From Tubulanus polymorphus (taxonomy: Eukaryota > Animalia > Nemertea): DNA of 64,000 bases. Location: contig NC_134034.1 of assembly GCF_964204645.1 (NCBI RefSeq), forward strand, positions 5,244,914 to 5,308,913, written 5' to 3'. Shown here in pieces: positions 1-13,279 of the stretch; positions within the stretch are counted from its first letter, which is position 1, and every line of letters begins with the position of its first letter. Under the pieces are notes generated by a model. The model did not search any database. It was given only the letters and a program-made list of their open reading frames with translations, and was not told where the DNA came from. The position numbers and the translations under genes are program-made.

Positions 1-1358
1 CTTCATAGGCGTCTCCAAACCCCATCAGAGTATATACAGGATCAGTCACATCTTCTGGAATCAAACACCGTTTAAGTCTTATTTCTTCTAATAATGGGAG
101 GTCGTTCACCCATTTTGACCACGGTACTTGTAATTCTTCACTGAGTGGATCATCCCAACCAGGAACTTGAACCCATGACTTCTGAAATATCATCTTACCA
201 CGTACAGTAAATGGTGACAAAAAAACCTGTTGGATCAAACAGTCGATTTAACGTACTCAAAACAGTGCGACGTGTGTCAATACCATTTTCAACATTAACA
301 TTACTAATACCAAACATCAAAACATCATCTTAACTCACCATCATCACTTAACTCCCAGTGCCTTGGTAACCGCTCCATTATCAGTTATTTCCATGTGGTA
401 TGAAGCAAGATCTTCTTCTTTCATCCCTTTGAGACATTCTGGTTTGTTGGATATAAACTTTCTTAAAGGAAACCCTCCTTCAGTCATCATAGCCTTCATG
501 TCTGAAGCCAGTGAAGCAGTGTCGTTAACAGAATCTGCTCCGGAGATTACATCATCAACAAAAATATTTTCCTTTATTTCAGAACATGCCTTGGGGTAAC
601 GATCTTTGCAACTTTCAACATGATCCATCACAGTTTTAATACTTGAAAAGGCGACGACTTAATACCAAATACCACACGTGTCATTCTATAGATTTTCGGT
701 GGTTCATCCGTCTTCAAATCTCTCCATAGAAAACGTAGACTATCTCTGTCTCTTTCATTAATCCCGATTTGATGGAACATTTTTTCAATGTCAGCAATTA
801 ACGCAACCTTGTGTTGGCGAAATCGTATAAGAATTGCTAGTATGTCCGGCTGGAGTGCTGGACCAGGAATCAGAGTGTCATTAATGGAAATTCCTTCAGG
901 ACCCTTCGACGCACCATCATTCACTATTCTGGTTTTAGTTGTAGTACTGCTTTTCTTGAGAACAGGATGGTGAGGAAGATACCATACAGTACGTCCATCA
1001 GTTGGTTCCTCATCTTCGATAACTAATTCTGCTCTTCCAGAAAGAATCAGGTCATCAATTTGCTCTTTGTACTGTGATGCTAACTCTGGATCCCCTTTTA
1101 ATCTTCTTTCAATTCCATACAGACGATTCTCAGCAATTACTCGATTAGACTTTAACTTGCGATCTTTCCAATCAGGATGTTTGAGTAAACCAGTCTCGTA
1201 TCTACCATCTTTAAAAACAGTTTTTTCTTCATGTTGCTTTAAAGCATCAGTCTCCAAAATAGTAAACTTGGAACTTATTCCACGCGGTAATATACCAATA
1301 CGTTCCAGCTCCCAATGCTTGACCGCTATCTCAGTCGGATCTGTTATATCTACTCTTC
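1..1358 (-). pseudogene. BEL/Pao pol: reverse transcriptase and start of the Pao RNase H-like region, frameshifted
   Basis: ORFs 628-1257 and 344-631 carry BEL RT motifs. The frame upstream of 1257 reads DITDPTEIAVKHWELERIGILPRG and joins FCRV at 11150 once the insertion is removed. Confidence 0.9.
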
Positions 1359-1655
1359 TATGGAACGCGATTCATGCAATAAACATGACCATTGTTACGA
1401 CGTAGGATAATTGCTGCGCCGTAGTATATTTGCGTCGGTGTATATTTTCTCCGACGTAGGATAATTGCTGCACCGTAGTATATTTGCGACGTGTCTACTT
1501 TTCATCGCATCTATTTCGCTGCGACGTGGGTAGTTTGTAACGACGTAGCTTATTTACGTGAAGGTTCCATAGTTCACCGTATGGTGGCGCCACGGTATTA
1601 TATATTCAATAAAGTTAGAATTTAATTGAATCATATCGCTCTTTTCGACGCAACA
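1359..1655 (+). repeat. Left TIR of the IS3EU-type element, with internal direct repeats CGACGTAGGATAATTGCTGC
   Basis: Reverse complement of 10853-11149. Confidence 0.95.
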
Positions 1656-2183
1656 CTCAGGGATTCCCCATGGTCCATTCCCCATTGCTTGTTGAGCAAA
1701 TGGCATCAGACCACAATTAGGTACCTAAAATGAAAAAGAGGTCCTCCATAAATGTTGCCATAATTCTGCAAATGGGATAGGTAACGAATTTCGGTTATAT
1801 GTATGAAATCCATTGGTCCTGAGAGACAGATTGATGATGAAATAAGGGATTCCCTGGACTTTTCTTGCTTGGAGTAAGGGTACCAAACCCGGTGGGGCAT
1901 TCCCTTCTATATTCGGTCCAGATGTACTGGCATACCTGTACTGGGATACCCCTCCTTTCTAAAGGTTTGATTATTTCAAAAGTTAGGTTGGGTACATGGG
2001 GCGAAAACCACTTCAATGCGTAGCTAAGATGCTGGTCTATGAGGCATACGCAGGATTTCCCCTGAATTTACGCGCTTATATGTGAACTAAACGTTTGAAT
2101 TTCTTGTTTTTACCATAGGATATAGAAGATTTTGGAATAGTGGTCTGAGCTCAAATGGCAAATTCCGCGCAAATTCCAATACA

Positions 2184-4690
2184 ATGAATGTCGTACTCTC
2201 AGAACTTAATCTACACCATCTAATCGAAAGATTTCAAGAAGAAAATGTAAGTAGTAGTAGTAGTAGTAGTCCGAATATCAGAGAGTGTATGGGTTCCTGG
2301 ATCATGGGAATTACCAATTCAAATGATAATATTACCGCTAGATAAAAGTATTGTTTTATTTTTAACCATTTTGTTGTAGGTAAATATTGATATCGTAAAG
2401 CATCTTTCTCATGAACAGCTTGTGGAATTAGGAGTCCACAATCTTGGCGACAGAGTCTTACTGATAGACAAGTGCAAAAATCCAGTTCCACGAGAAGTTG
2501 GTATGTCATAATATTGAAATTATTTCTTGCTCAACAATTTGAGGCAATGGCCAATAATGAGATGAGATTGCTTGATTATATTCAGTTAGGGAGCATCTCA
2601 AAATGTTGATAGTTACTTCAATTAGAATTACTCGCGGAAGGGGATGGGGGGGGGTAAAGGCCTCCCGCGGATTCATCACCACTGCCGAACTATCGATTTA
2701 TTGTGGTGCAATAACGATAACATTGAATTGAACCGTCTCTCGTTTAGATGCTGTTGATATTTTAGATGTATTTTATTTTGTTTATAAAAGTCTATTAGGC
2801 TTTAATAGGTTTTTCACTTGTAATTTTGCTATTTTATTTTTCAATTAAAAGTTGTGATAATTGCGAAATACACTCGTGAGAATGTCTTATCTTTGTCTGT
2901 GGTTTCTCATTAGAAAATCAATAGTTCCAACTTTGAAAGGGTGGGGTGGGGGGTTAGAAAGAATTAGACAGTTATTCTAATTGAAGTAACTATCGAAATT
3001 TTGAGATGCTCCCTTTAGTCATACTCGTATGTCTTCTCTTCCTATTAATCTGATGCTAGATAATTAAATTTCAGCAATGGTTCGTGGAAGACCTAAAAGA
3101 GAGATACCATATCAAAGTCTTGAATATCTTATTCTACATACATTCACTTATAAAGAGATTGGCATTATGTTCAATGTTTGTGAAAGAACTATTGCTCAAC
3201 GTGTTATGGAATTTGGACTTCGCGTCTCTAATATGTCAGATAAATTATCAGGTGGGTAAGGTCTTGTAAATCACCTATGATATCTGAATACAGCTACATT
3301 GGTTTTCGCATTTCTTTAAACCGGTAAACGCCTAATTCGGTGGAAAAAATTAAAGTCCCAACTGTACTGGTTTAGGCGGAGTCTACTGTATTTCTTACTA
3401 GCAAATAAAGCATAATTTTTCTATTTGCAGATGATATTCTTGATGACATCGTGGCAGATGCTGTGGCCATTCATCCTAATTGGGGAGAAAAGCTACATGC
3501 TGGCCACATACAAAGTTTAGGCCTTAGAGTTCAGCGTGACCGGATAAGGGAGTCGTTAAGACGGGTCGACCCAGATGGAATCGATGAGAGGAAACGGAAA
3601 ACACTGAAGAGAAGAGAATATTGGGTTCCAGGGCCAAATTTTATATGGCATGTAGATGGCAATCATAAGTTGATTAGGTATAGATTTTTGTCACTTACAC
3701 TTAATATTTCCTCGATGTATTTGAAAAATATCAAAATGAAGTATTCTATCCAAAATGATTTCACGATATTTAGCCTTTGACGAGAAGTTCATGTGTATTT
3801 CAAACAATAATTAAGAAAGCATTATTGTTACATGGATATTAGTAATACATTGTATGAACAATATCATTGAAAGATAACATTTATTGAATTTTCAGATGGC
3901 GTATAGTAATTCATGGGGGAATTGATGGATTTTCTCGGATTCCTGTCTTTATGAGATGTAGCATAATTGCATAACATAATTGCACATCCTGACATTGCAT
4001 TACATAATTGCACATCCTGACAGAGGCCCTGGGCATTTTATTACTGGCCGCAGTGTCCACAATCAACGGATAGAAAAACTTTGGCGCGATGTGTATTCTC
4101 TCTGCACATCTACCTTCTATAATTTATTTCATTCACTAGAAGAAGAAGGTTTACTGATAGCAGACAATGACGTTGACCTGTATGTTTTGCACATGGTTTT
4201 TCTACCCCGCCTACAAAACAGCATTAATCGCTTTATTGATGCCTGGATATGTCATAAGGTCAGAACAGTGGGTCAGTCACCGCTTCAATTATGGTTAAGA
4301 GGTGAAAACCAAGGCAGCCCTCCTGTTGGTGATCATTTGGTAAGCGAAAAAAAAAACACATGCACAACTTTTTCAGTAGAATAATTTTTCAGTTAATTTA
4401 TTTATAATCATATTCTGTATAAATTGGTAATACAAGTTTTGAGCTCAAAATGATGTGTGCCAATTATATTCTCTTTCATTTAGGAACTAATGGCAGCTAA
4501 CTTGGATGATCACGAGAGAGTTATGGTGCCCTTAACTCCATGTCCCATAGATGAAGCAGATCTACCAGTGTTCCAAGAGTTGTCAAGAAGTTCAATGGAA
4601 ACAGAACATGACTTAGGAAAAAATGCTTATATTGAAATCCGACAAGCTTTCCTGCATTTATTATTGGTATATACAGTCAACTCCTCTTAA
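2184..4690 (+). pseudogene. SAM - HTH - integrase-core (DDE) transposase, six exons, catalytic core partly deleted
   Basis: Exons 2184-2246, 2380-2500, 3075-3251, 3431-3677, 3896-~4339, ~4485-4690; phases of the first four introns checked. Motifs: SAM (ELGVHNLGDRVLL), RGRPK, [47 protein letters not shown]. The usual RVRSDxGxEN segment is missing at about 3960-4000. Confidence 0.85.
2588..3014. mobile_element. MITE in transposase intron 2 (Harbinger/Tourist-like GGG..CCC ends)
   Basis: About 40-bp inverted termini AGGGAGCATCTCAAAAT...ATTTTGAGATGCTCCCT. Confidence 0.7.
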
Positions 4691-4983
4691 TCCGGATCCC
4701 ATTAATCCGGATTTTTAATTATTCCGTAGTCATTTCAAAGTCCCGTTTTTTCTTGTTCAAATCCTTAATAAATTATTCAGTTAATCCGTATGAAATAATC
4801 CGTATTAATGCTGAAGTAATCAATTTACAAGTGAAAAAATTAATAATACACCCCTTAAGGGCTATTTCCTGCCTATACTAGGCCAGGTATTAATATTCTG
4901 AGAATTTTCAAATAATCTGTATTTTCAGTTAATCCGTATGATTTTGCCAGGTCCCACTTCTACGGATTAAGAAGAGTTGACTG
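4674..4983. mobile_element. Tc1/mariner (pogo-like) MITE; supplies the stop codon of the last transposase exon
   Basis: TA-CAGTCAACTCCTCTTAATCCG...CGGATTAAGAAGAGTTGACTG-TA. Confidence 0.8.
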
Positions 4984-5241
4984 TAGACTGTAGACTTGAC
5001 TGTATATAGATAGAAACCAGCTGAATCGTTTATCTGAAACACCAATTTTATGTATTATTTGTTCAAAAAATATAAAAACTTAATGGACTGAATAAATGAA
5101 TAACGAAGTAGTCTTATGAATAAAACATAAGTTCATAAACTGGAATGTTAATTGTCAATCCACAACAAGCCTTTTGATATCAATATGATTGAACTGAAAC
5201 CTTGACTGACAAATTCAATGACCGGTTTTCCCTTGAACCTG

Positions 5242-5469
5242 TTACCCTTTAAAGCCTGGCCCACTCTAGGGATATATCAAAGGTGAGTGTATGATGGCAC
5301 ATTTCCCATCACCTGCCTTTGATAAATTCCAAGAGGGGGCACTTTTAAGAGTCAACAACCAGTATGCTGGGCGGGGACGGAATTTATATTCGTGAGGGAT
5401 CAGGCCCAATTCCCGACCACCGTCATACTAGCTATTGACAAAAAGGGTGCTTTGAGCTTTAAAGGGTAA
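5242..5469. mobile_element. Short inverted-repeat element, piggyBac-like CCC..GGG ends
   Basis: TTACCCTTTAAAGC...GCTTTAAAGGGTAA. Confidence 0.5.
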
Positions 5470-5601
5470 AGATTCTAGGACTATTATCCGACTTAATACA
5501 TAGTAAATAAAACATACAAACAAATGGGATGTGTGTCATGAGGATTTCATGTTCATTTACTTCGAATATTCATTTAAAATGAATGCATGTATAAAATCAT
5601 T

Positions 5602-8600
5602 TTATATACATCCAAATCCCGGGGAATTGTATATACAAAATGTCATCTCCTTGACAAAACTTTTAACCTCAAGCATCTTTTTATTCACTGGAAGTCTTAT
5701 TACCATGGCACAAGTATTGGCATGTACTAAGTATCCATCACCACTATGATTGAACTCGATCCTAGGCTTGTGGTGGAAACCTATTATTGGTTCCTGAGAA
5801 GATCCTGTGACAAACATGTGAATATCCTCCAAGGACAGGGTCATCTCGCCAACATCTGTTTTTTCCTTGATATTGCCTTCTGTAACAGAATTTAATGAAA
5901 ATAACTCATTGTTTGTTTCAATTATCAAGTTCAGAATGCAGAGAAATAATAATTTTGTTACATAAGTTTGTTCTGTGAAAAATAAAAATGAAATTAAAAA
6001 GAATAGCAGCCTTAAAATGGATTTTGACTGTAGATGTATAAATGATAACACCAGGAGGTGCTTAAACCTACCAAATGATTCTTCGAGTAAGAACGTCCAA
6101 TTCATGATAATTTGTTCTTCTTCTACCCTCTTATTTGATCCAGGAGGGGAGTAATCAACATGAAATAACTGTGTCATGTAGTCTACGGACGTTGGACTTG
6201 GAGCCCCACTAAAGACCTTTTCGAATGATGAGGGGAATTTGCGGATGAGATCCAGAACTCCGAGAGTCGACATGCCTGCATAACATAAGATGTACAAGAA
6301 TTCAAACATTGTAGCCCTAATGAACAGAATCGTACCGAGCTCTCTGCGTGAACAGAAAACAACCTTAAACCCAAGCTGAGACCGAAATGTAATATAGCTG
6401 CATTCGCAAATTCTACTGCTAAACTGTAAAATACTAACCTTCTAGAAGTTGGTTTAGCTCTGATTTTGAACGGTGAACCAGGGAGTTCAAGGCCAGATAC
6501 TCTACTATCTTTTGTTTGTCGGACAATTTTATGAAAATAGAGGGTTTTGTAAAGCCCATTTCAAAGCGACATTCTAGATTTTCATCTACAAATTTCACCA
6601 ATTCAGCTTCGTCACAAATCTCATTTAGCTGCAAAAGAAAGTTGAAACAATCAAATGTGTATTAGTACTGTCTTATAATGAACCCGAATACAAACTCTTG
6701 AACTGAGAGTCCAGGGAAACCATGCCTACTTTGTGAAATGCTTGACAATTTGACAATTCAATATTCAACATCATGGTAAACATATACAAATCAATGAGCT
6801 TGAAACTCATTAGGAAGCTACAGGTCGAGGAATTAGCAATAGCCCAAGTGGGCTAAAAAGTGAATGCAACAGCCCACTAGGACTTCAGTACAAATGGGCT
6901 AAAAAAATCAATGAATACTACACCTGTTGTAGTTTTTTGCGTAAATCGACATCAGGCACTTCTTCGACAACGATTGTTTTGGCATCATACTTCTCGTACA
7001 GGATAATTTTGGCAATTAATGAATTAAAAAAGCGGGCCCCAGCCCCGCCATGAATAAGGTTCAAAGCTATTAACTGGCCAAAATGAAAAAAAAGATCTGT
7101 TATCCAGAGCTACCAAGTCATGACTCAGTGATCTCGAATTTTCTGGCCCAACAAGAAGCGGAGATCTAGCAGCCTCTGAAATGACTAATTCCAGGAATTC
7201 CCTTCGAGGACCACCATTGTCAATTCCAGCCTCTCCCAAGAAGGTCACTTGAACAGGCTTGGTTAGTTTTGAAGAATTCGTCCTCTTCAGCTTAGCAACG
7301 GCATCTTTAAAGATAAACTTTCTTCTACACGTGAAACTCAATGTCTCTTCGGAATCTTGTTCAACTACCTTGGCAGCGTGGTCTTTTACGATAACCTCAA
7401 GAGAACGGCCATCCCTAAAGTGAAAATATTTCATTCTATATTTAACCTTTGAAAATAAATTGAAAAGACCTTAATGAAGTGCAACATAATGATGTGATTT
7501 AAACTTGGTTACAGTCGCTTTTGTGAATGTTAACAAATACTTTTTTTGGTTAGGGTTAGAGTGTATGGGGCACCCACACACCGCTACTGCGGCAATCGAG
7601 GATTCCACTCATGGCAGGCGAGGATCCGCCAGGTTCGCTGGTAGATAGTTGGTCGTCCGCGTTCAATTTCTTCCACATTTCGATTAATTAAATCTGAATG
7701 AATTTTTCTCTTATCTTTCCGATACCTATGTAAAAGAATGAATTTATTGCATATTTGCATAGTATATGGATTCGCGAGTCTAAAAATTCAGTTCAATGAA
7801 ATTCAATGAACTGATTTTGAGAACGGAAGACCTGTCGCCATCAAGTGGGTGAATCGCGTTCCATAGATACCTGGTGTTGTGGGTTCCCCATTGAGAAGGA
7901 AAGCATGTACATGTACCATATATAATAAATCTACACACCGATAGCCTAAGAAAGTACACATAGACATATAAAAAGCAGAGACCTGAATATAGACTCGGTA
8001 ACAAAAATATATCCATGCTACTACCTTTGTTCTTTTAGATAATGATGCCGTAACTGTAAAATAAATTTGGATTATCCATGACAAGTGTGAATGTGGCATC
8101 GTGAAAAGCTGATAGAAAATTGTCTATGAATGTTAATGCAAGAAAATATAGTTTTTCAATTTCCTGAGTTTAATACAATTCACGTTGACAGTGAAAAGTT
8201 TACGACCGTGGCTTACCGTTCCTCTTTCAATTGTGGTTCCACCACCTCGGCTAAGCTGTTAGCAATTGCCTGATTCAAATCTGCATCACTGTCATCATCT
8301 GGAAACATCATATCTAAATCGGTAGTAAGATCAATAAACTCCTGGTGCCTAAAATAAAACCAATTATGCATTTTATATAAGCTAATTTAGTACAAGAATC
8401 AGAGGGTGTGTCCAGGATGCTGGGAAGAAGCAAGCCATTTAAGACAATCATCTCGGCTTTTTATGAAACTAATAATGCATTAAATATCTTACATTTACAT
8501 GTATGGTAAGTAGTATTGACACCTGATGATGAATTGTAAAACATACATCAACATCACCATATACAGCGAATGTGGAATATAGCTGCTGAAGAAACGTACC

Positions 8601-10778
8601 TGTGGAAATTGTAGGCTGAATTAGGCCGAACTTGTTTAGGATTTCTTTCTGCATCATTTGTCTGTAATCCATAATAATGATAATCCTTAGGTCCATTATA
8701 GAAAACTTATCACTGATAAAATATTTAGTGAGTGTACTTTTTAATTCAGCAGATACAACAAACATAATAAACTGTTATTGCCTGCAATCTGAAACATCTT
8801 GTTACAATGTACATGTATATTACAAGCTATACATACAGACGAAATGCTCCTCTTAACAGCAGCAACAGCAGCAGCAGCAGCATTTGAAATCTTCGGTAGA
8901 TCATCGATCAAACTAGCGATTTAAGAATAATATTTAAAAATTTAATTCCTTTCATCTGTAGAGTGGAATCCTCATCATAACAAACAATAAATCAATTCAT
9001 CAGATACGGATAACATACATGTATATAGAATTGCGACCCAAGTAAGACAAATTAATTTTATACTGGTTTTAACCAACAGGACCCGGTTCCACAGTAGTGA
9101 GTTAGAGTTAACTCTGAGTTAAAATTAGTTAATTTTCAATGTTTTAACTCAGAGTCAAATCTTAACTCACAACTGTGGAACTGGGTTCTGATTTTCTGGT
9201 CCTGTGAAGTTCGTTGTAATAAGAAAAAATATATACCCGTCACAGCTTTCAGTGTGTTCCCTCAACAAAGAGAGTGGAAATTCCGGATCGCATTTCAAGC
9301 CCTTTTCTTTCACTGATTCCGCCTACAACCAGAAACAAATTTTATTGATACTTAAGATCATTTATAAGAACAGCAGAAAATAGTTCATTGACTCACCTTT
9401 GGAGTAGTTTGCGACAATATCTCTCTTTGTATGGGGCGAATATAGATTTTTCCTCGAGCCACAAGGCTCTTCAAGGCATACGGTGTGATGGAGCTGCTTT
9501 CAATGTCAAGCAGCTCCAACATTTTATTTGCCCTGGCAGCAAGAAACTCGAAACCACCACCGGTGGACAACTGTGGAAACACTTCGAACAATTTACCTCG
9601 AAGTTCTATGAATGTTGAATCTTTTTCTATTTCCAATGTTTTCTCGCCCAATCCTGACTGTATCAGGCTAATTCTACTTTCCCTGTCATGCGGAATAACC
9701 ATCTGGAAGCAATGAAATAAAACCATTATTGAAACAGATCGTATTAGTGATAATTCGAAGATAACTTCTGCAAAAGCAAGTTATTAACTTGAGTTATACA
9801 ATGTACAGTTACTTTGGTATTTTTTAATCAAAACAGCTTTACAATAGGCCTATTAACTTTTCAATGTCTGAACTGCTGGTATATGAATGAAAATCTATAA
9901 CTTACACAGTCAGGATTGCCTAGACAAAAGAAAGTTAATTTCATCATAGCCGACTTGTTTTTCGGATCCTTTTTTTTATGTAAATAAAGTTTTCCTCTCC
10001 TTGCCTATGTCATAGGACGGAATAGGTACAGCTAAAAATTTAAAGCATAGGTTTAGTACTGGTACTCGTTATTACAACTTATGATTGTAAATTCCCATTT
10101 ACTCACTTGGACGATTAACACTAGTTGATGATATAAAGTGCCGACATTTCACTTTCAGGAGTGCTCGATCGCCCATTCTTGTTACTCCCATGGAGGTGAG
10201 GTCAGTGTCGAGCATTGCTACGACAGCTGCTGGAGTTACCTGAATAAGATAATGAAAATATTCTGCAAAACACATTATCTCGCTTGTGCTGTGAGCCCAA
10301 TTATGTTACCGCTTCGAGAGAGTAGGTATAGACTCTGCGCCTGGAAAAATGTTGTTACCGGTTATTGAGAAATACCAGAGCCAGAAGAGCACTTAGTTTA
10401 CATCCTTATTACACGTCACAAGACATTACTTCAGGCTTGTAAAGCTGCCTAGCCTGTCATTAGTCATTATAATAATAAAATGATCTTAACATATCACAAT
10501 TCATTTCCATCAACAGGAGACGATCGTCCGGGAGTGGGTGCACGTGCCGGGCGACGATATGGTCTGGATCTTCTCCATATCGACGATCCATCCATCCAGA
10601 TCCATCAACGTATCGTCCGCCGGCGGCGGCACTCGACACTGGTGGTAAGTGGTAGGCCTATGTATATATCTGGATGGATGGGCTTATTGTCCTTATATTG
10701 AATAGTTATCCTTACATTTTCCCTCCGGAATGTTTCTATTACTTCATCAAGTTTCAACTCGGAAAGAATTGCATCCAT
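5602..10778 (-). pseudogene. Multi-exon HECT E3 ubiquitin ligase (SAM, Ubl/PB1-like, UBZ-like, SIM/UIM, HECT), frameshifted
   Basis: Exons 10778-10716 and 10239-10107 encode a SAM domain. 9702-9398 is a beta-grasp-like domain, about 9325-9240 a UBZ-like finger, and about 8350-8218 reads FIDLT...DADLNQAIANSLAE. HECT N-lobe FLGEAGIDNGGPRREF (7434-6925); C-lobe FVTGS and ANTC ending PGFGCI*. Lesions near 9975 and 7090. Confidence 0.85.
9078..9188. repeat. Palindromic hairpin element (MITE-like) in a HECT-gene intron
   Basis: GGTTCCACAGT-GTGAGTTA...TAACTCAC-ACTGTGGAAC arms. Confidence 0.6.
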
Positions 10779-10852
10779 GATTTGTATACCGGCGTGATTA
10801 GATTAGATTAGATTCGAAGGAAAGCGCGAAAGTTTCGGATTGTGGCGTACTA

Positions 10853-11149
10853 TGTTGCGTCGAAAAGAGCGATATGATTCAATTAAATTCTAACTTTATT
10901 GAATATATAATACCGTGGCGCCACCATACGGTGAACTATGGAACCTTCACGTAAATAAGCTACGTCGTTACAAACTACCCACGTCGCAGCGAAATAGATG
11001 CGATGAAAAGTAGACACGTCGCAAATATACTACGGTGCAGCAATTATCCTACGTCGGAGAAAATATACACCGACGCAAATATACTACGGCGCAGCAATTA
11101 TCCTACGTCGTAACAATGGTCATGTTTATTGCATGAATCGCGTTCCATA
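10853..11149 (-). repeat. Right TIR of the IS3EU-type element
   Basis: Reverse complement of 1359-1655. Confidence 0.95.
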
Positions 11150-13279
11150 CTCTACAGAACGGATACTTTTCTTCAATGATTCTTGAATCTGAATTAATAC
11201 TGCAAGGACCAGACAAAATCCAACCAACATGGCTTTTCTGTGCCACTAGTGCACCATCATCGTCCTTCATCGAACAGTCCATCATGATTCTTAACGTGTC
11301 TTCGATTCCCAACAGTATATCAACGCTCGCCTCCCCTCGTGGGAATTTGTCAGCGAACAGTAAGTTTTTAAACTTAGGAATGGTAGAAATGTCCACATCA
11401 ACTGAACCTAGGTCAGCACATGGCTTGTCTAAGACGTAAGCAACAACTTCGAAAACTTCACCACCCAATCAGGAATAATACTGGACACATGAAGTTTTAC
11501 CTTCTGAGTTTTAATCTTCATACTTCAACCACCAGCTAAAGTAAATTCTGCATCAACTTTCGGACCTTGCAAATTCAACTGTTTAGCTGCAACAGTTCGA
11601 ATAAAGGACACACCGCTACCTGTGTCAAACAAACATCTACCAGTAATTTCACTAGACTTTGATATCAAATTAACAAGACCACTTTGCATTACAATCTTCC
11701 TGGGTCCTTGTACGACCTTGACAAGACCACTAGCGCCCTTTACTTTGGTTACTTCATCATCGTTATCATCAGCTAGATTAGACTCATTAGACCTTGAATC
11801 TGTAGACTGCTTTTTCTCATGTTCATTTCTTGATGTTTCTCTGTGTAGTATATCGCAATGCCTCTTTTTACATTTTCTGCATCTCATCTTGCTGTGACAT
11901 TGACGAGCATTGTGACTTCTTTTTAGACAGTTGGAACATGCATTACTTCTTTTTACGCAGTCTGCCCGTTCAGGAACTGACATTTTCTTCATATCATCAC
12001 ATATCAGTGGCGAGTGAGGTTTACTACAAAATATACATGTCTTAGTGTTATCATCAGATTCTTCAGTACTGGAAATTTGAAGAGAATGCCCTGTGGCTGT
12101 AGTACTAGATCTCCGAGGTTGAAATCTCTTTTCTACATGTAATTTACCACCACCACCCTTTTCTCCGTCTGATCTTCGAGCTACAGTGAGCGCATCTTGT
12201 ATCTTGTTTAACATGTGGTCAAACCTCATCGGAAGATTTGAAGTGGTATATTCATCAGTAGATTGTTCACCGTCATTATTTTCATCTCTTTTCTCATTCC
12301 TGAGTGAATCAGATTCCCATTTTCGAACCAACGACTTTGGCAGTTTTGGTCGAACTAATGATGTTAACACCCAGCTACTCTTAATAAGATGTACATCAGA
12401 CTCTGTCTTCTTCATCAAATAATTCCAGCAAGATAATAACTTGGTATAGAGAGGATCCAAGTCCTTTACACTTAATGTCATTGCTGGCTCAATCGCTGAA
12501 ATATCAACAATGGCTTTCTGTAGCCTTGTGTGAACATCCCCATACTTGTTGTCTAGAGCCTTCATGATGTTGTCATAGGTTGGATTACGTAACGCCAAAA
12601 CTAGTTTCTTAGCATCTCCGTCCACCAGTGTCTTGACTAGATGTGCCTTCTCAACATCAGAGTAACCTGGTTTCTCTACTTCTGCTTCCACCAATTCTAC
12701 CCACGACTCAAATTGATCGAGTTCACCCTTGAATATAGGAATTTGTATTTCCCGCTTCCTTTGAGTCAATGTATCAAGGATTTGTTGAAGTTGGTCGCCT
12801 GTAATACCAGTATTCATCTCCTTGAAGGCATCAGCAAGCCCTTTAGTAAAATCTGCGGCTGATACTATACTTCGTCGTTCAGGACTGACCTGTCTCGAAG
12901 CTTTACTTTTTTCTTTCTTATAGACCTTGGCTTCAAGATTTGATAATTTTGCCAACATGTCGAAATAATTTTCCTTGTACAGGTTTTCAGTCTTTTCTTC
13001 CTTTTCAACATCTTCTTTAGACATTTTCTTTAACCGTTCTTCATTTTCTTGATTGTAATCAGTCTTGTCTTGAACGACCTCTAGTGCCTCATAGACTGTC
13101 TGTAAGTTGGCTCTTGCTGCTATAGCCTTTGCGATAGCTACTTGGGCCTCATCATGTTTTCCACCATCATACAAAGTTTCTGCTTTGATGCGCAGGTCAT
13201 CAACAAACTTATGCGTCTGCGTAAACTTTCGACGAGCAATAGGTCTACTGTCAAGAAACTTTTGTAGATTATCAGCCAT
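11150..13279 (-). pseudogene. BEL/Pao gag-protease polyprotein region
   Basis: 584-aa ORF with gag core, knuckles CIFCSKPHSPLIC / CSNCLKRSHNARQC / CRKCKKRHCDILH and LFDTGS protease; in-frame TGA at 11525 and a frameshift near 11468. Confidence 0.92.

What the first reader, a model, noticed from the sequence alone, without database searches (positions are those of the whole stretch)
2184..10778. Transposase and HECT E3 ligase of one transposon share a homologous N-terminal SAM module
Seen (absent from the ORF track): transposase exon 1 (2184-2246) encodes MNVVLSELNLHHLIERFQEEN and HECT-gene exon 1 (10778-10716) encodes MDAILSELKLDEVIETFRREN. Both are exactly 63 nt and end AAT|GTAAG. Their second exons give VNIDIVKHLSHEQLVELGVHNLGDRVLLIDKCK and VTPAAVVAMLDTDLTSMGVTRMGDRALLKVKCR. 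Both lie outside the TIRs, so this is an old duplication conserved at protein level. Established: SAM domains form homo- and heterotypic head-to-tail complexes. Inference: a two-component system in which SAM-SAM binding docks a ubiquitin ligase onto the transposase, either for self-limiting degradation or transpososome disassembly, or to ubiquitinate host silencing factors at the element.
Basis: partly seen in the sequence, partly recalled or inferred. Interest (0 to 1): 0.82.

Follow-up and report, generated by a model that had tools for sequence, protein, structure and literature searches.

The report
Transposon with SAM-tagged transposase and ligase
A decayed copy of a cut-and-paste jumping gene (IS3EU/GingerRoot type) carries its cutting enzyme plus its own ubiquitin-tagging enzyme. 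Both genes begin with related copies of one small docking (SAM) module, probably copied from one end of the element to the other; whether the two proteins dock on each other is untested.

Summary
Window 1359-11149 is one 9.8-kb DNA transposon with perfect 297-nt inverted ends, TATGG..CCATA termini and a 6-bp target duplication, which are the IS3EU/GingerRoot hallmarks. It has two inward-reading genes: an rva_4 integrase-type transposase (T) and a HECT-type ligase (H).

Each gene starts with a 63-nt exon ending AAT|GTAAG, followed by a second exon that matches the C-terminal half of SAM. The T/H similarity is far above chance (z 10-12). Third codon positions are saturated, so this is an old duplication kept as protein. 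A spliced contig in one public run joins the H SAM exon 2 to the downstream H exons.

New points:
- This copy is broken in both genes.
- SAM is not general on these transposases: none in 56 + 120 database relatives, and none seen in a 56%-related family here whose ligase gene has it.
- The T-H gene pair recurs in other organisms.
- In an older lineage, exon 1 and its upstream DNA still form part of the inverted ends (87-89% identical). This points to end-to-end copying as the origin of the shared module.

SAM-SAM docking of ligase onto transposase stays plausible but untested. The scan has already noted this family on other copies in this genome.

The parts
1353..1358 (.). left target-site duplication (6 bp, one mismatch to the right copy)
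   Evidence: An empty-site paralogue of the host BEL/Pao element shows one copy of the 6-mer. The C3 copy of the family has a perfect 6-bp duplication.
1359..1655 (+). left terminal inverted repeat, 297 nt, starts TATGG, with ~19-nt subterminal repeats
   Evidence: 100% complementary to 10853-11149. Homology to the other copies begins exactly at 1359.
2184..2246 (+). T exon 1: SAM module, first half (63 nt, phase 0 donor)
2380..2500 (+). T exon 2: SAM module, second half (ends in phase 1)
   Evidence: Pfam SAM_2 E 2.5e-4, 21.6 bits against cut-off 20.5, profile positions 34-64 of 66
3075..3251 (+). T exon 3: helix-turn-helix; an ATG sits right after the acceptor
   Evidence: Weak HTH hits. It aligns with the HTH block of 56 homologues.
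3431..3677 (+). T exon 4: linker and start of the catalytic core (first D)
   Evidence: rva_4 positions 2-21
3896..4339 (+). T exon 5: rva_4 catalytic core. This copy has a net 76-nt deletion at 3963-3998 that removes the second catalytic D, with a 28-nt tandem duplication at the junction.
   Evidence: the intact C6 exon scores rva_4 E 9e-59; family D4
4484..4690 (+). T exon 6 (C-terminal tail; end of model not verified)
   Evidence: Reading; conserved in a 65%-related copy
5602..5879 (-). H last exon: HECT C-lobe with the catalytic-Cys motif and the stop codon; 3' UTR runs to at least 5449
   Evidence: Pfam HECT E 4.6e-4, positions 238-304 of 306; spliced contig
6072..6275 (-). H exon 12
   Evidence: Splice joints in run X4; frame chain
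6439..6628 (-). H exon 11
6924..7414 (-). H exon 10: HECT N-lobe. This copy has one extra base at 7086 (frameshift).
   Evidence: PDB hits to the HECT domains of Rsp5, SMURF1, E6AP and TOM1, E about 2e-5
7847..7865 (-). internal copy of the terminal 19-mer (2 mismatches), same orientation as the right end
   Evidence: 3 matches in the window, 0.02 expected
8025..8053 (-). H exon 9: 29-nt exon present in the spliced contig. It shifts the frame and brings a stop before the HECT part.
8217..8348 (-). H exon 8: acidic stretch with a UIM-like motif
   Evidence: Read from the sequence; a UIM is flagged faintly on the sea-cucumber neighbour gene
8600..8661 (-). H exon 7
8837..8912 (-). H exon 6 (Ala-rich, over a GCT repeat)
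9237..9322 (-). H exon 5: C2HC/UBZ-type zinc finger (first Cys lost in this copy)
   Evidence: Pfam zf_C2HC_14 E 1.2e-5 on the C6 copy
9397..9702 (-). H exon 4: conserved about 100-aa domain, probably a ubiquitin-like beta-grasp
   Evidence: Conserved in family B, C2b and an outside contig. AF2 mean pLDDT is 70. Only weak fold hits, all beta-grasp.
9906..10031 (-). H exon 3: linker. This copy lacks 2 nt in an A-run (frameshift).
   Evidence: Joints 10107|10031 and 9906|9702; comparison of copies
10107..10239 (-). H exon 2: SAM module, second half (ends in phase 1)
   Evidence: SAM_1 E 0.098; profile against PDB hits SAM only; joint to exon 3
10716..10778 (-). H exon 1: SAM module, first half (63 nt); the ATG is 75 nt inside the TIR
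10853..11149 (-). right terminal inverted repeat
11150..11155 (.). right target-site duplication

Best explanation
Window 1359-11149 is a defective copy of a young, low-copy IS3EU/GingerRoot-type DNA transposon: five copies, about 98.4-99.5% alike.

The element has two genes that read inward from its two ends. T is an integrase-like DDE transposase built as SAM, helix-turn-helix, then rva_4 core. H is a ubiquitin ligase built as SAM, linker, beta-grasp-like domain, UBZ-type zinc finger, UIM-like motif, then HECT. The T-H pair is an old, conserved feature of a clade of these elements.

The SAM module is not original to the transposase. The module, or at least its first exon, sits at or within the inverted ends. 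Copying between the two ends (extension or homogenisation of the inverted repeat) placed the same N-terminal module on both genes. After that, both copies were kept by purifying selection.

Shown: element borders and class; gene content; homology and SAM nature of the modules; old age with protein-level constraint; H splicing from SAM exon 2 onward; recurrence of the T-H pair.

Inferred: the direction of copying (H to T). Also inferred: the SAM on T replaces the usual helical N-terminus as a self-association handle, and the two related SAMs let ligase and transposase co-assemble. I put co-assembly at about 35%.
For: Element and class:
- 297-nt perfect TIRs.
- Borders fixed by comparison of copies.
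- 6-bp duplication.
- TATGG..CCATA termini match the IS3EU rule TAYGG..CCRTA with 6-bp duplications (PMC12730594; PMC6839031).
- rva_4 core.

H is HECT-type.

SAM homology.

Constraint:
- dN is 0.28-0.41 with saturated dS between lineages A and A3, for T exons 1-2 and H exon 2. H exon 1 gives dN 0.70 and dS 1.57.
- SAM stays in frame with the HTH exon in both lineages.
- H exons 1-4 are in frame and open in copy C5a.

RNA: run X4 has a 2,078-nt spliced contig with GT..AG introns that joins H exons 3 to 13. A second contig of the same run gives the joint from H exon 2 to exon 3. Depth is near zero in the introns. The genome holds no processed copy.

SAM is an add-on to T:
- 0 of 56 closest representatives and 0 of the 120 best-scoring word-search relatives of P0005 carry SAM.
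- In family B, T starts at the HTH exon next to the subterminal repeats, while the H gene of that family has the 63-nt SAM exon 1.

End-to-end copying: in lineage A3, T exon 1 (C5c) and H exon 1 (C7) are 87-89% identical in inverted orientation. About 190 nt of upstream subterminal-repeat DNA is 77% identical. The two exon 2 sequences are only 41% identical.

T-H linkage elsewhere: L045, L046, L050, L051.
Against:
- The H exon 1 to exon 2 joint was not among the joints displayed.
- The spliced contig includes a 29-nt exon that stops the frame before HECT. A SAM-to-HECT protein therefore needs that exon to be skipped.
- H exon 3 is out of frame or stopped in 4 of 5 copies.
- The A3 evidence rests on two single-copy fragments on different chromosomes. 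It could be a one-off rearrangement and not the family's structure.
- Absence of SAM in database transposases partly reflects ORF-style gene calls, which would miss small upstream exons.
- Only one family-B copy was informative.
- Nothing here tests binding.
Confidence: 0.6

Rival explanations
1. One reading: a two-component system in which heterotypic SAM-SAM binding docks the HECT ligase on the transposase, so that the ligase ubiquitinates the transposase (self-limitation or transpososome disassembly) or nearby host silencing factors.
For: - Both modules are kept under purifying selection.
- The transposase took up the ligase's kind of SAM, not some other N-terminus.
- In lineage A3 a T-type exon 1 sits in front of an H-type exon 2, so the halves are interchangeable.
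- The nearest solved SAMs by profile include polymer-forming ones, Caskin and SHANK.
- H also carries ubiquitin-reader motifs.
- The T-H pair is conserved across organisms.
Against: - No binding data of any kind.
- T-H pairs persist in relatives where no SAM was found on T, or on either gene, so the partnership does not depend on paired SAMs.
- The only transcript seen would end before the HECT domain.
Confidence: 0.3
2. Historical by-product with independent use: the module was duplicated simply because first exons lie in or next to the inverted ends. Each SAM now serves its own protein only, for example transposase multimerisation for end synapsis and ligase self-assembly or substrate binding, with no T-H contact.
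For: - The inverted-end arms include exon 1 in lineage A3.
- SAM on T takes the place of a non-conserved helical N-terminus of about 90 aa found in relatives.
- The T and H exon 2 sequences have diverged to 36% identity, and each is conserved within its own type.
Against: This does not explain why the same module type was retained on both genes for so long. It is not distinguishable from the docking model with sequence data alone.
Confidence: 0.35
3. The SAM exons are not part of the T and H proteins: they are 5' UTR exons or short upstream ORFs, and translation starts at the ATG at the start of T exon 3 and of H exon 4.
For: - Both downstream exons begin with an ATG right at the acceptor.
- The family-B T gene starts at the equivalent Met.
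- H exon 3 is disrupted in most copies.
Against: - First and second codon positions are conserved while third positions are saturated.
- dN is far below a saturated dS.
- The frame into the next exon is preserved in lineages A and A3 for T and in copy C5a for H.
- The H exon 3 peptide is conserved in family B and in an outside contig.
Confidence: 0.07
4. The HECT gene is a passenger: a host gene fragment captured once, irrelevant to the element. The resemblance of the N-termini would then reflect capture of two host SAM exons.
For: GingerRoot elements are known to carry host gene fragments (PMC6839031).
Against: - The pair recurs with diverged sequences in several families of this genome.
- It also recurs in four outside contigs, including an NCBI assembly.
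- The H gene is complete, multi-exon, spliced and expressed.
Confidence: 0.05

Closest known systems
IS3EU / GingerRoot superfamily of DNA transposons (PMC6839031; PMC10045372; fungal TET-carrying IS3EU in PMC12730594)
   Same: - Integrase-related DDE transposase (Pfam rva_4/rve).
- 6-bp target duplication.
- TIRs longer than 30 bp that end TAYGG..CCRTA.
- Fungal members carry accessory genes (alpha-kinase, TET/JBP), with the kinase opposite in orientation to the transposase.
   Different: - The accessory gene here is a HECT-type ubiquitin ligase. No searchable paper holds both IS3EU and HECT.
- The transposase carries an N-terminal SAM shared with the accessory gene.
- The TIRs are very long (297 nt).
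Transposases fused to ubiquitin or SUMO proteases: Ginger1 with OTU or Ulp1, Mutator with Ulp1, Helitron with OTU (PMC2836005)
   Same: These are mobile DNA elements that encode an enzyme of the ubiquitin or SUMO system. That paper already proposed that the ubiquitin pathway takes part in transposition.
   Different: - Those enzymes are erasers (proteases) fused to the transposase.
- Here the enzyme is a writer (E3 ligase) with reader motifs. It is encoded by a separate gene and linked to the transposase only by a shared SAM module.
SAM domains that form homo- and heterotypic head-to-tail assemblies (Caskin, SHANK, Eph receptors, Ste11)
   Same: The exon-2 profile matches exactly this region of these solved SAM domains and nothing else in the PDB.
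   Different: - Only half of the domain could be scored at a time.
- The fold, and the mid-loop and end-helix surfaces, were not modelled because the exons were not joined.
- That these SAMs oligomerise is from general knowledge, not tested here.
G2E3-like HECT ligases of animals
   Same: The ESM Atlas feature search puts the N-lobe exon next to clusters auto-named G2/M phase-specific E3 ligase-like with Pfam HECT (score 0.92).
   Different: This is a lead only. There is no alignment or E-value, and the word search found no relatives in the allowed length range. G2E3 proper has PHD fingers, not SAM (from memory).

Membership tests
IS3EU/GingerRoot DNA transposons | integrase-like DDE transposase | tested here: met
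   rva_4 E 9e-59 and rve E 5e-6 on the intact exon 5 of copy C6. The window copy keeps profile positions 2-21 and 92-183 only.
IS3EU/GingerRoot DNA transposons | 6-bp target-site duplication | tested here: met
   Copy C3 has a perfect 6-mer on both sides. The window copy matches 5 of 6, and an empty-site paralogue shows a single 6-mer. Copy C6 has none.
IS3EU/GingerRoot DNA transposons | TIRs over 30 bp ending TAYGG..CCRTA | tested here: met
   297-nt arms, TATGG..CCATA. The rule is taken from PMC12730594 section 3.1.3.
IS3EU/GingerRoot DNA transposons | transposase groups with reference IS3EU transposases in a tree | not testable with these tools
SAM domain (Pfam SAM_1/SAM_2) | profile match above the curated cut-off | tested here: inconclusive
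   T exon 2 scores SAM_2 at 21.6 bits against a cut-off of 20.5, but this covers only profile positions 34-64. H exon 2 scores SAM_1 at 13.5 bits against 23. The A3 variants give no hit alone. The four-sequence profile hits 13 PDB chains, all SAM. The exons were scored apart, not joined.
SAM domain (Pfam SAM_1/SAM_2) | five-helix bundle fold | not tested
This needs the spliced exon 1 + exon 2 peptide.
HECT E3 ligases | N-lobe homology | tested here: met
   Exon 10 of copy C6 matches the start of the HECT domains of Rsp5, SMURF1, E6AP, TOM1 and Itch, E 2e-5 to 4e-4.
HECT E3 ligases | C-lobe with catalytic cysteine | tested here: inconclusive
   The last exon scores Pfam HECT E 4.6e-4, 20.4 bits against a cut-off of 23.9, over profile positions 238-304 of 306. 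A Thr-Cys lies where the catalytic motif is expected. There is no PDB sequence hit for this exon alone.
HECT E3 ligases | ubiquitin thioester formation and transfer | not testable with these tools
   Needs biochemistry.

The most novel reading that the evidence does not exclude
A clade of animal IS3EU transposons encodes its own HECT ubiquitin ligase. In this lineage the transposase has borrowed the ligase's SAM domain, so that the two proteins co-polymerise. The ligase is thereby placed on the transpososome, where it could control transposase turnover, complex disassembly or local chromatin. This would be a transposon-encoded ubiquitin 'writer' physically coupled to its transposase.
Probability: 0.25. 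Interest if true: 0.85.

Novelty: new variant of a known kind. Interest (0 to 1): 0.6.

Why it matters
Transposons are known to carry ubiquitin or SUMO proteases. I found no searchable paper on a transposon-borne E3 ligase conserved across animal phyla. If the ligase acts on the transposase or on host factors, it would be a new way for a mobile element to regulate itself or evade silencing.

The SAM pair offers a concrete handle that can be mutated to test this. The inverted-end route to a shared first exon is also a simple general mechanism: a two-gene element can use it to place one module on both of its proteins.

This particular copy is dead, and the scan has already reported the family from other copies in the same genome. 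The added value here is threefold:
- the test of the SAM claim;
- the splice evidence for H;
- the evidence that SAM is a lineage-specific add-on to the transposase.

Tried and rejected
- Chance similarity: rejected.
- Similarity because the exons are part of the TIR in this copy: rejected. The arms end at 1655 and 10853, and no nucleotide similarity is left between the inner flanks.
- TA target duplication: rejected by the empty site and by copy C3.
- My first guess of a 14-nt micro-exon after H exon 2 was wrong. The contig shows a 126-nt exon, 10031-9906.
- Pfam on single HECT N-lobe exons gives nothing. PDB sequence search was needed.
- SAM exons were sought by tblastn in family B, A2, C2b, 19 paralogue loci and 7 outside contigs. 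Only the family-B H exon 1 was found.
- The word search with the HECT exon found nothing in its length range.
- Several contig look-ups gave contigs too short to be useful.
- Weak multi-copy SAM-like hits (E 0.2-0.8) could not be fetched.
It was re-run from coordinates.
Everything was done exon by exon, by reference.


Full report
WHAT IS THERE

The finding's span lies inside one mobile element, window 1359-11149 (9,791 bp).
- The two ends are 297-nt inverted repeats, 100% complementary, with internal repeats of about 19 nt.
- Comparison with a full paralogous copy shows that homology starts exactly at 1359 and stops exactly at 11149.
- The element sits inside the pol ORF of a BEL/Pao retroelement. 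A paralogue of that retroelement without the insertion carries a single copy of the 6-mer that flanks the element here on both sides, with one mismatch.
- Another copy of the family (C3) has a perfect 6-bp duplication.
- The termini read TATGG..CCATA.

A 6-bp duplication, TIRs over 30 bp and TAYGG..CCRTA termini are the features used to assign IS3EU elements (PMC12730594). GingerRoot, the same superfamily, is defined by a 6-bp duplication and an integrase-related transposase (PMC6839031; PMC10045372).

The genome (268 Mb) holds five copies, about 98.4-99.5% alike.
- The window copy is full length but broken in both genes (details below).
- C6 is full length and lacks a target duplication.
- C10b lacks its left end.
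- C3 and C5a are interrupted by large insertions.

THE TWO GENES

T (+ strand) has six exons.
- Exons 3-6 give a helix-turn-helix and a Pfam rva_4 integrase core.
- The window copy has a net 76-nt deletion in exon 5 that removes the second catalytic Asp, which is present in C6.
- Other copies carry other defects: a stop in C10b, loss of exon 2 in C3 and loss of exon 5 in C5a. All six T exons of C6 align without gaps.

H (- strand) was modelled from a spliced contig.
- Run X4 contains a 2,078-nt contig whose ten joints all have GT..AG ends on the minus strand. It links H exon 3 (10031-9906) through 9702-9397, 9322-9237, 8912-8837, 8661-8600, 8348-8217, 8053-8025, 7414-6924, 6628-6439 and 6275-6072 to 5879 and beyond.
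- A second contig of the same run gives the joint 10107|10031, which connects SAM exon 2 to exon 3.
- Intron bins have little or no depth in that run.
- The genome has no processed copy: exactly five high-identity loci, all with introns. The contig therefore reflects RNA.

Scored exon by exon, H contains:
- a C2HC/UBZ-type zinc finger;
- a UIM-like acidic motif;
- a HECT N-lobe, with PDB matches to Rsp5, SMURF1, E6AP, TOM1 and Itch at E about 2e-5;
- a HECT C-lobe, Pfam HECT E 4.6e-4.

Exon 4 encodes a conserved domain of about 100 aa. Its AF2 model (mean pLDDT 70) gives only weak fold matches, all to ubiquitin-like beta-grasp domains.

The window copy of H has a 2-nt loss in an A-run of exon 3 and one extra base at 7086.

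THE SHARED MODULE

- Shuffling gives z = 12.2 for exon 1 and z = 10.0 for exon 2.
- Third codon positions match at random level, while first and second positions are conserved.
- T exon 2 passes the SAM_2 cut-off over the C-terminal half of the profile. H exon 2 hits SAM_1 weakly.
- A profile of the four available exon-2 peptides finds 13 PDB chains, all of them SAM domains: Caskin, SHANK, Eph and Ste11.

Both modules share the same gene structure: a first exon with a phase-0 donor after the same residues, and a second exon ending in phase 1.

HOW OLD, AND IS IT CODING?

Two diverged single-copy fragments exist.
- C5c holds the T half: exon 1, exon 2 (62% identical) and the HTH exon.
- C7 holds the H half: exon 1, exon 2 (55% identical) and parts of exons 4 and 5.

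Between these fragments and the window family, dN is 0.28-0.41 with synonymous sites saturated, for T exons 1-2 and H exon 2. H exon 1 gives dN 0.70 and dS 1.57. The SAM-to-HTH frame is kept in C5c, using a donor 19 nt further on. In copy C5a, H exons 1-4 form one open frame. The modules have therefore evolved as protein.

WHERE DID THE SHARED MODULE COME FROM?

SAM is not a family trait of the transposase.
- A full HMMER search with the intact core exon found 6,291 relatives.
- None of the 56 closest long representatives has SAM in Pfam, while all have rva_4 and many have an HTH.
- Local searches with the SAM exons against all 150 listed hits found nothing.
- None of the 120 best-scoring word-search relatives of P0005, a transposase 56% identical to T, carries a SAM family.
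- Relatives instead have a non-conserved helical stretch of about 90 aa before the HTH.
- Caveat: many of these are ORF-style calls that would miss small upstream exons.

Family B in this genome (transposase 56% identical) points the same way.
- Its H gene has a 63-nt SAM exon 1 with the same GTAAG donor, and a degenerate exon 2.
- Its T gene begins at the HTH exon, directly inside the subterminal repeats.

In lineage A3 the T-side and H-side fragments align in inverted orientation.
- About 190 nt of subterminal-repeat DNA is 77% identical.
- Exon 1 is 87-89% identical.
- The two exon 2 sequences are only 41% identical.

So exon 1 behaves there as part of the inverted ends, and a T-type exon 1 stands in front of an H-type exon 2. 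In the window family the H start codon is only 75 nt inside the TIR.

Taken together, the simplest history runs as follows.
1. The ligase gene had the SAM.
2. Copying between the two ends put the module on the transposase gene.
3. Later homogenisation could still exchange exon 1.

The A3 evidence comes from two fragments only, and could be a one-off rearrangement.

IS THE LIGASE PART OF THE ELEMENT'S BIOLOGY?

Diverged T-H pairs occur at further loci in this genome and next to related transposases from other organisms.
- Two ENA contigs are convergent and one is head-to-head, the latter with an exon-4-like match at E 2e-17.
- An NCBI assembly, GCA_002754855.1, has convergent HECT, UIM-like and N-lobe exons. 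I recall this assembly as a sea cucumber; that was not checked here.
- No SAM exons were detected at any of these loci.

Earlier notes of this scan on other copies in this genome, which they call a ribbon worm, reached the same view of the pair.

MECHANISM

What is shown stops at anatomy and history.
- It is not required for the T-H partnership, which exists without paired SAMs.
- The one transcript seen includes a 29-nt exon that stops the frame before HECT. It would encode a SAM, beta-grasp, UBZ and UIM protein without the ligase domain, unless that exon is skipped.

I favour SAM as a self-association handle on both proteins. I put co-assembly of T and H at about one in three.

LITERATURE

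- Transposases fused to OTU or Ulp1 proteases are known, and a role of ubiquitin in transposition has been proposed (PMC2836005).
- Fungal IS3EU elements carry kinase and TET genes.
- No searchable paper holds both IS3EU and HECT, and broader searches gave nothing relevant.

Noticed in passing
window 1-1358 and 11150-13279 (- strand): The host of the insertion is a BEL/Pao retroelement. It has a gag-like 584-aa ORF, a protease region, and a pol ORF that continues across the insertion site. A 97%-identical paralogue lies on contig C3.
   Followed up: partly
window 8025-8053 (- strand): A 29-nt exon is included in the only spliced H contig. It shifts the frame and brings a stop, so that transcript would encode the SAM/UBZ/UIM part without HECT. 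This may be a poison exon or an alternative exon.
   Followed up: partly
window 9966-9980: The A-run in H exon 3 differs in length among the five copies (exon 126, 127 or 128 nt). Only two copies keep the frame, and only one is fully open. It is a mutation hot spot.
   Followed up: yes
window 7847-7865 (- strand): A third copy of the element's terminal 19-mer (2 mismatches) lies in an H intron, oriented like the right end. It could be an alternative end or a relic transposase-binding site.
   Followed up: partly
window 7479-7678 and 9079-9278: Contig depth rises about ten- to five-hundred-fold in all four runs, which marks very high-copy short repeats inside H introns. The second one carries an inverted repeat (about 9077-9190).
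   Followed up: no
window 2588-3014: 45-nt inverted repeats (93% complementary) bracket a segment of about 430 nt in T intron 2. It looks like a small nested MITE and is present in all copies.
   Followed up: no
window 3966-4021: A 28-nt tandem duplication sits at the junction of the deletion that removed part of the transposase core in this copy.
   Followed up: partly
G000 C6:18205154-18214963 (L025/L031): This full-length copy has no target-site duplication. Its H start codon is changed to ACG, with a 50-nt deletion just upstream. The missing duplication may reflect recombination between copies.
   Followed up: partly
L046 5200-9800 (- strand) and 10001-11296 (+): In this outside contig the ligase-like gene and the transposase gene are head-to-head, less than 250 nt apart. 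This is the opposite of the tail-to-tail layout seen here.
   Followed up: partly
G000 C8:3179927, C10:11517481, C1:21792810 and at least 7 more: A multi-copy family gives weak matches to the H SAM exon 2 (41% over 32 aa) inside 73-aa open frames. It may be another repeat family with a SAM-like exon. The DNA could not be fetched.
   Followed up: no
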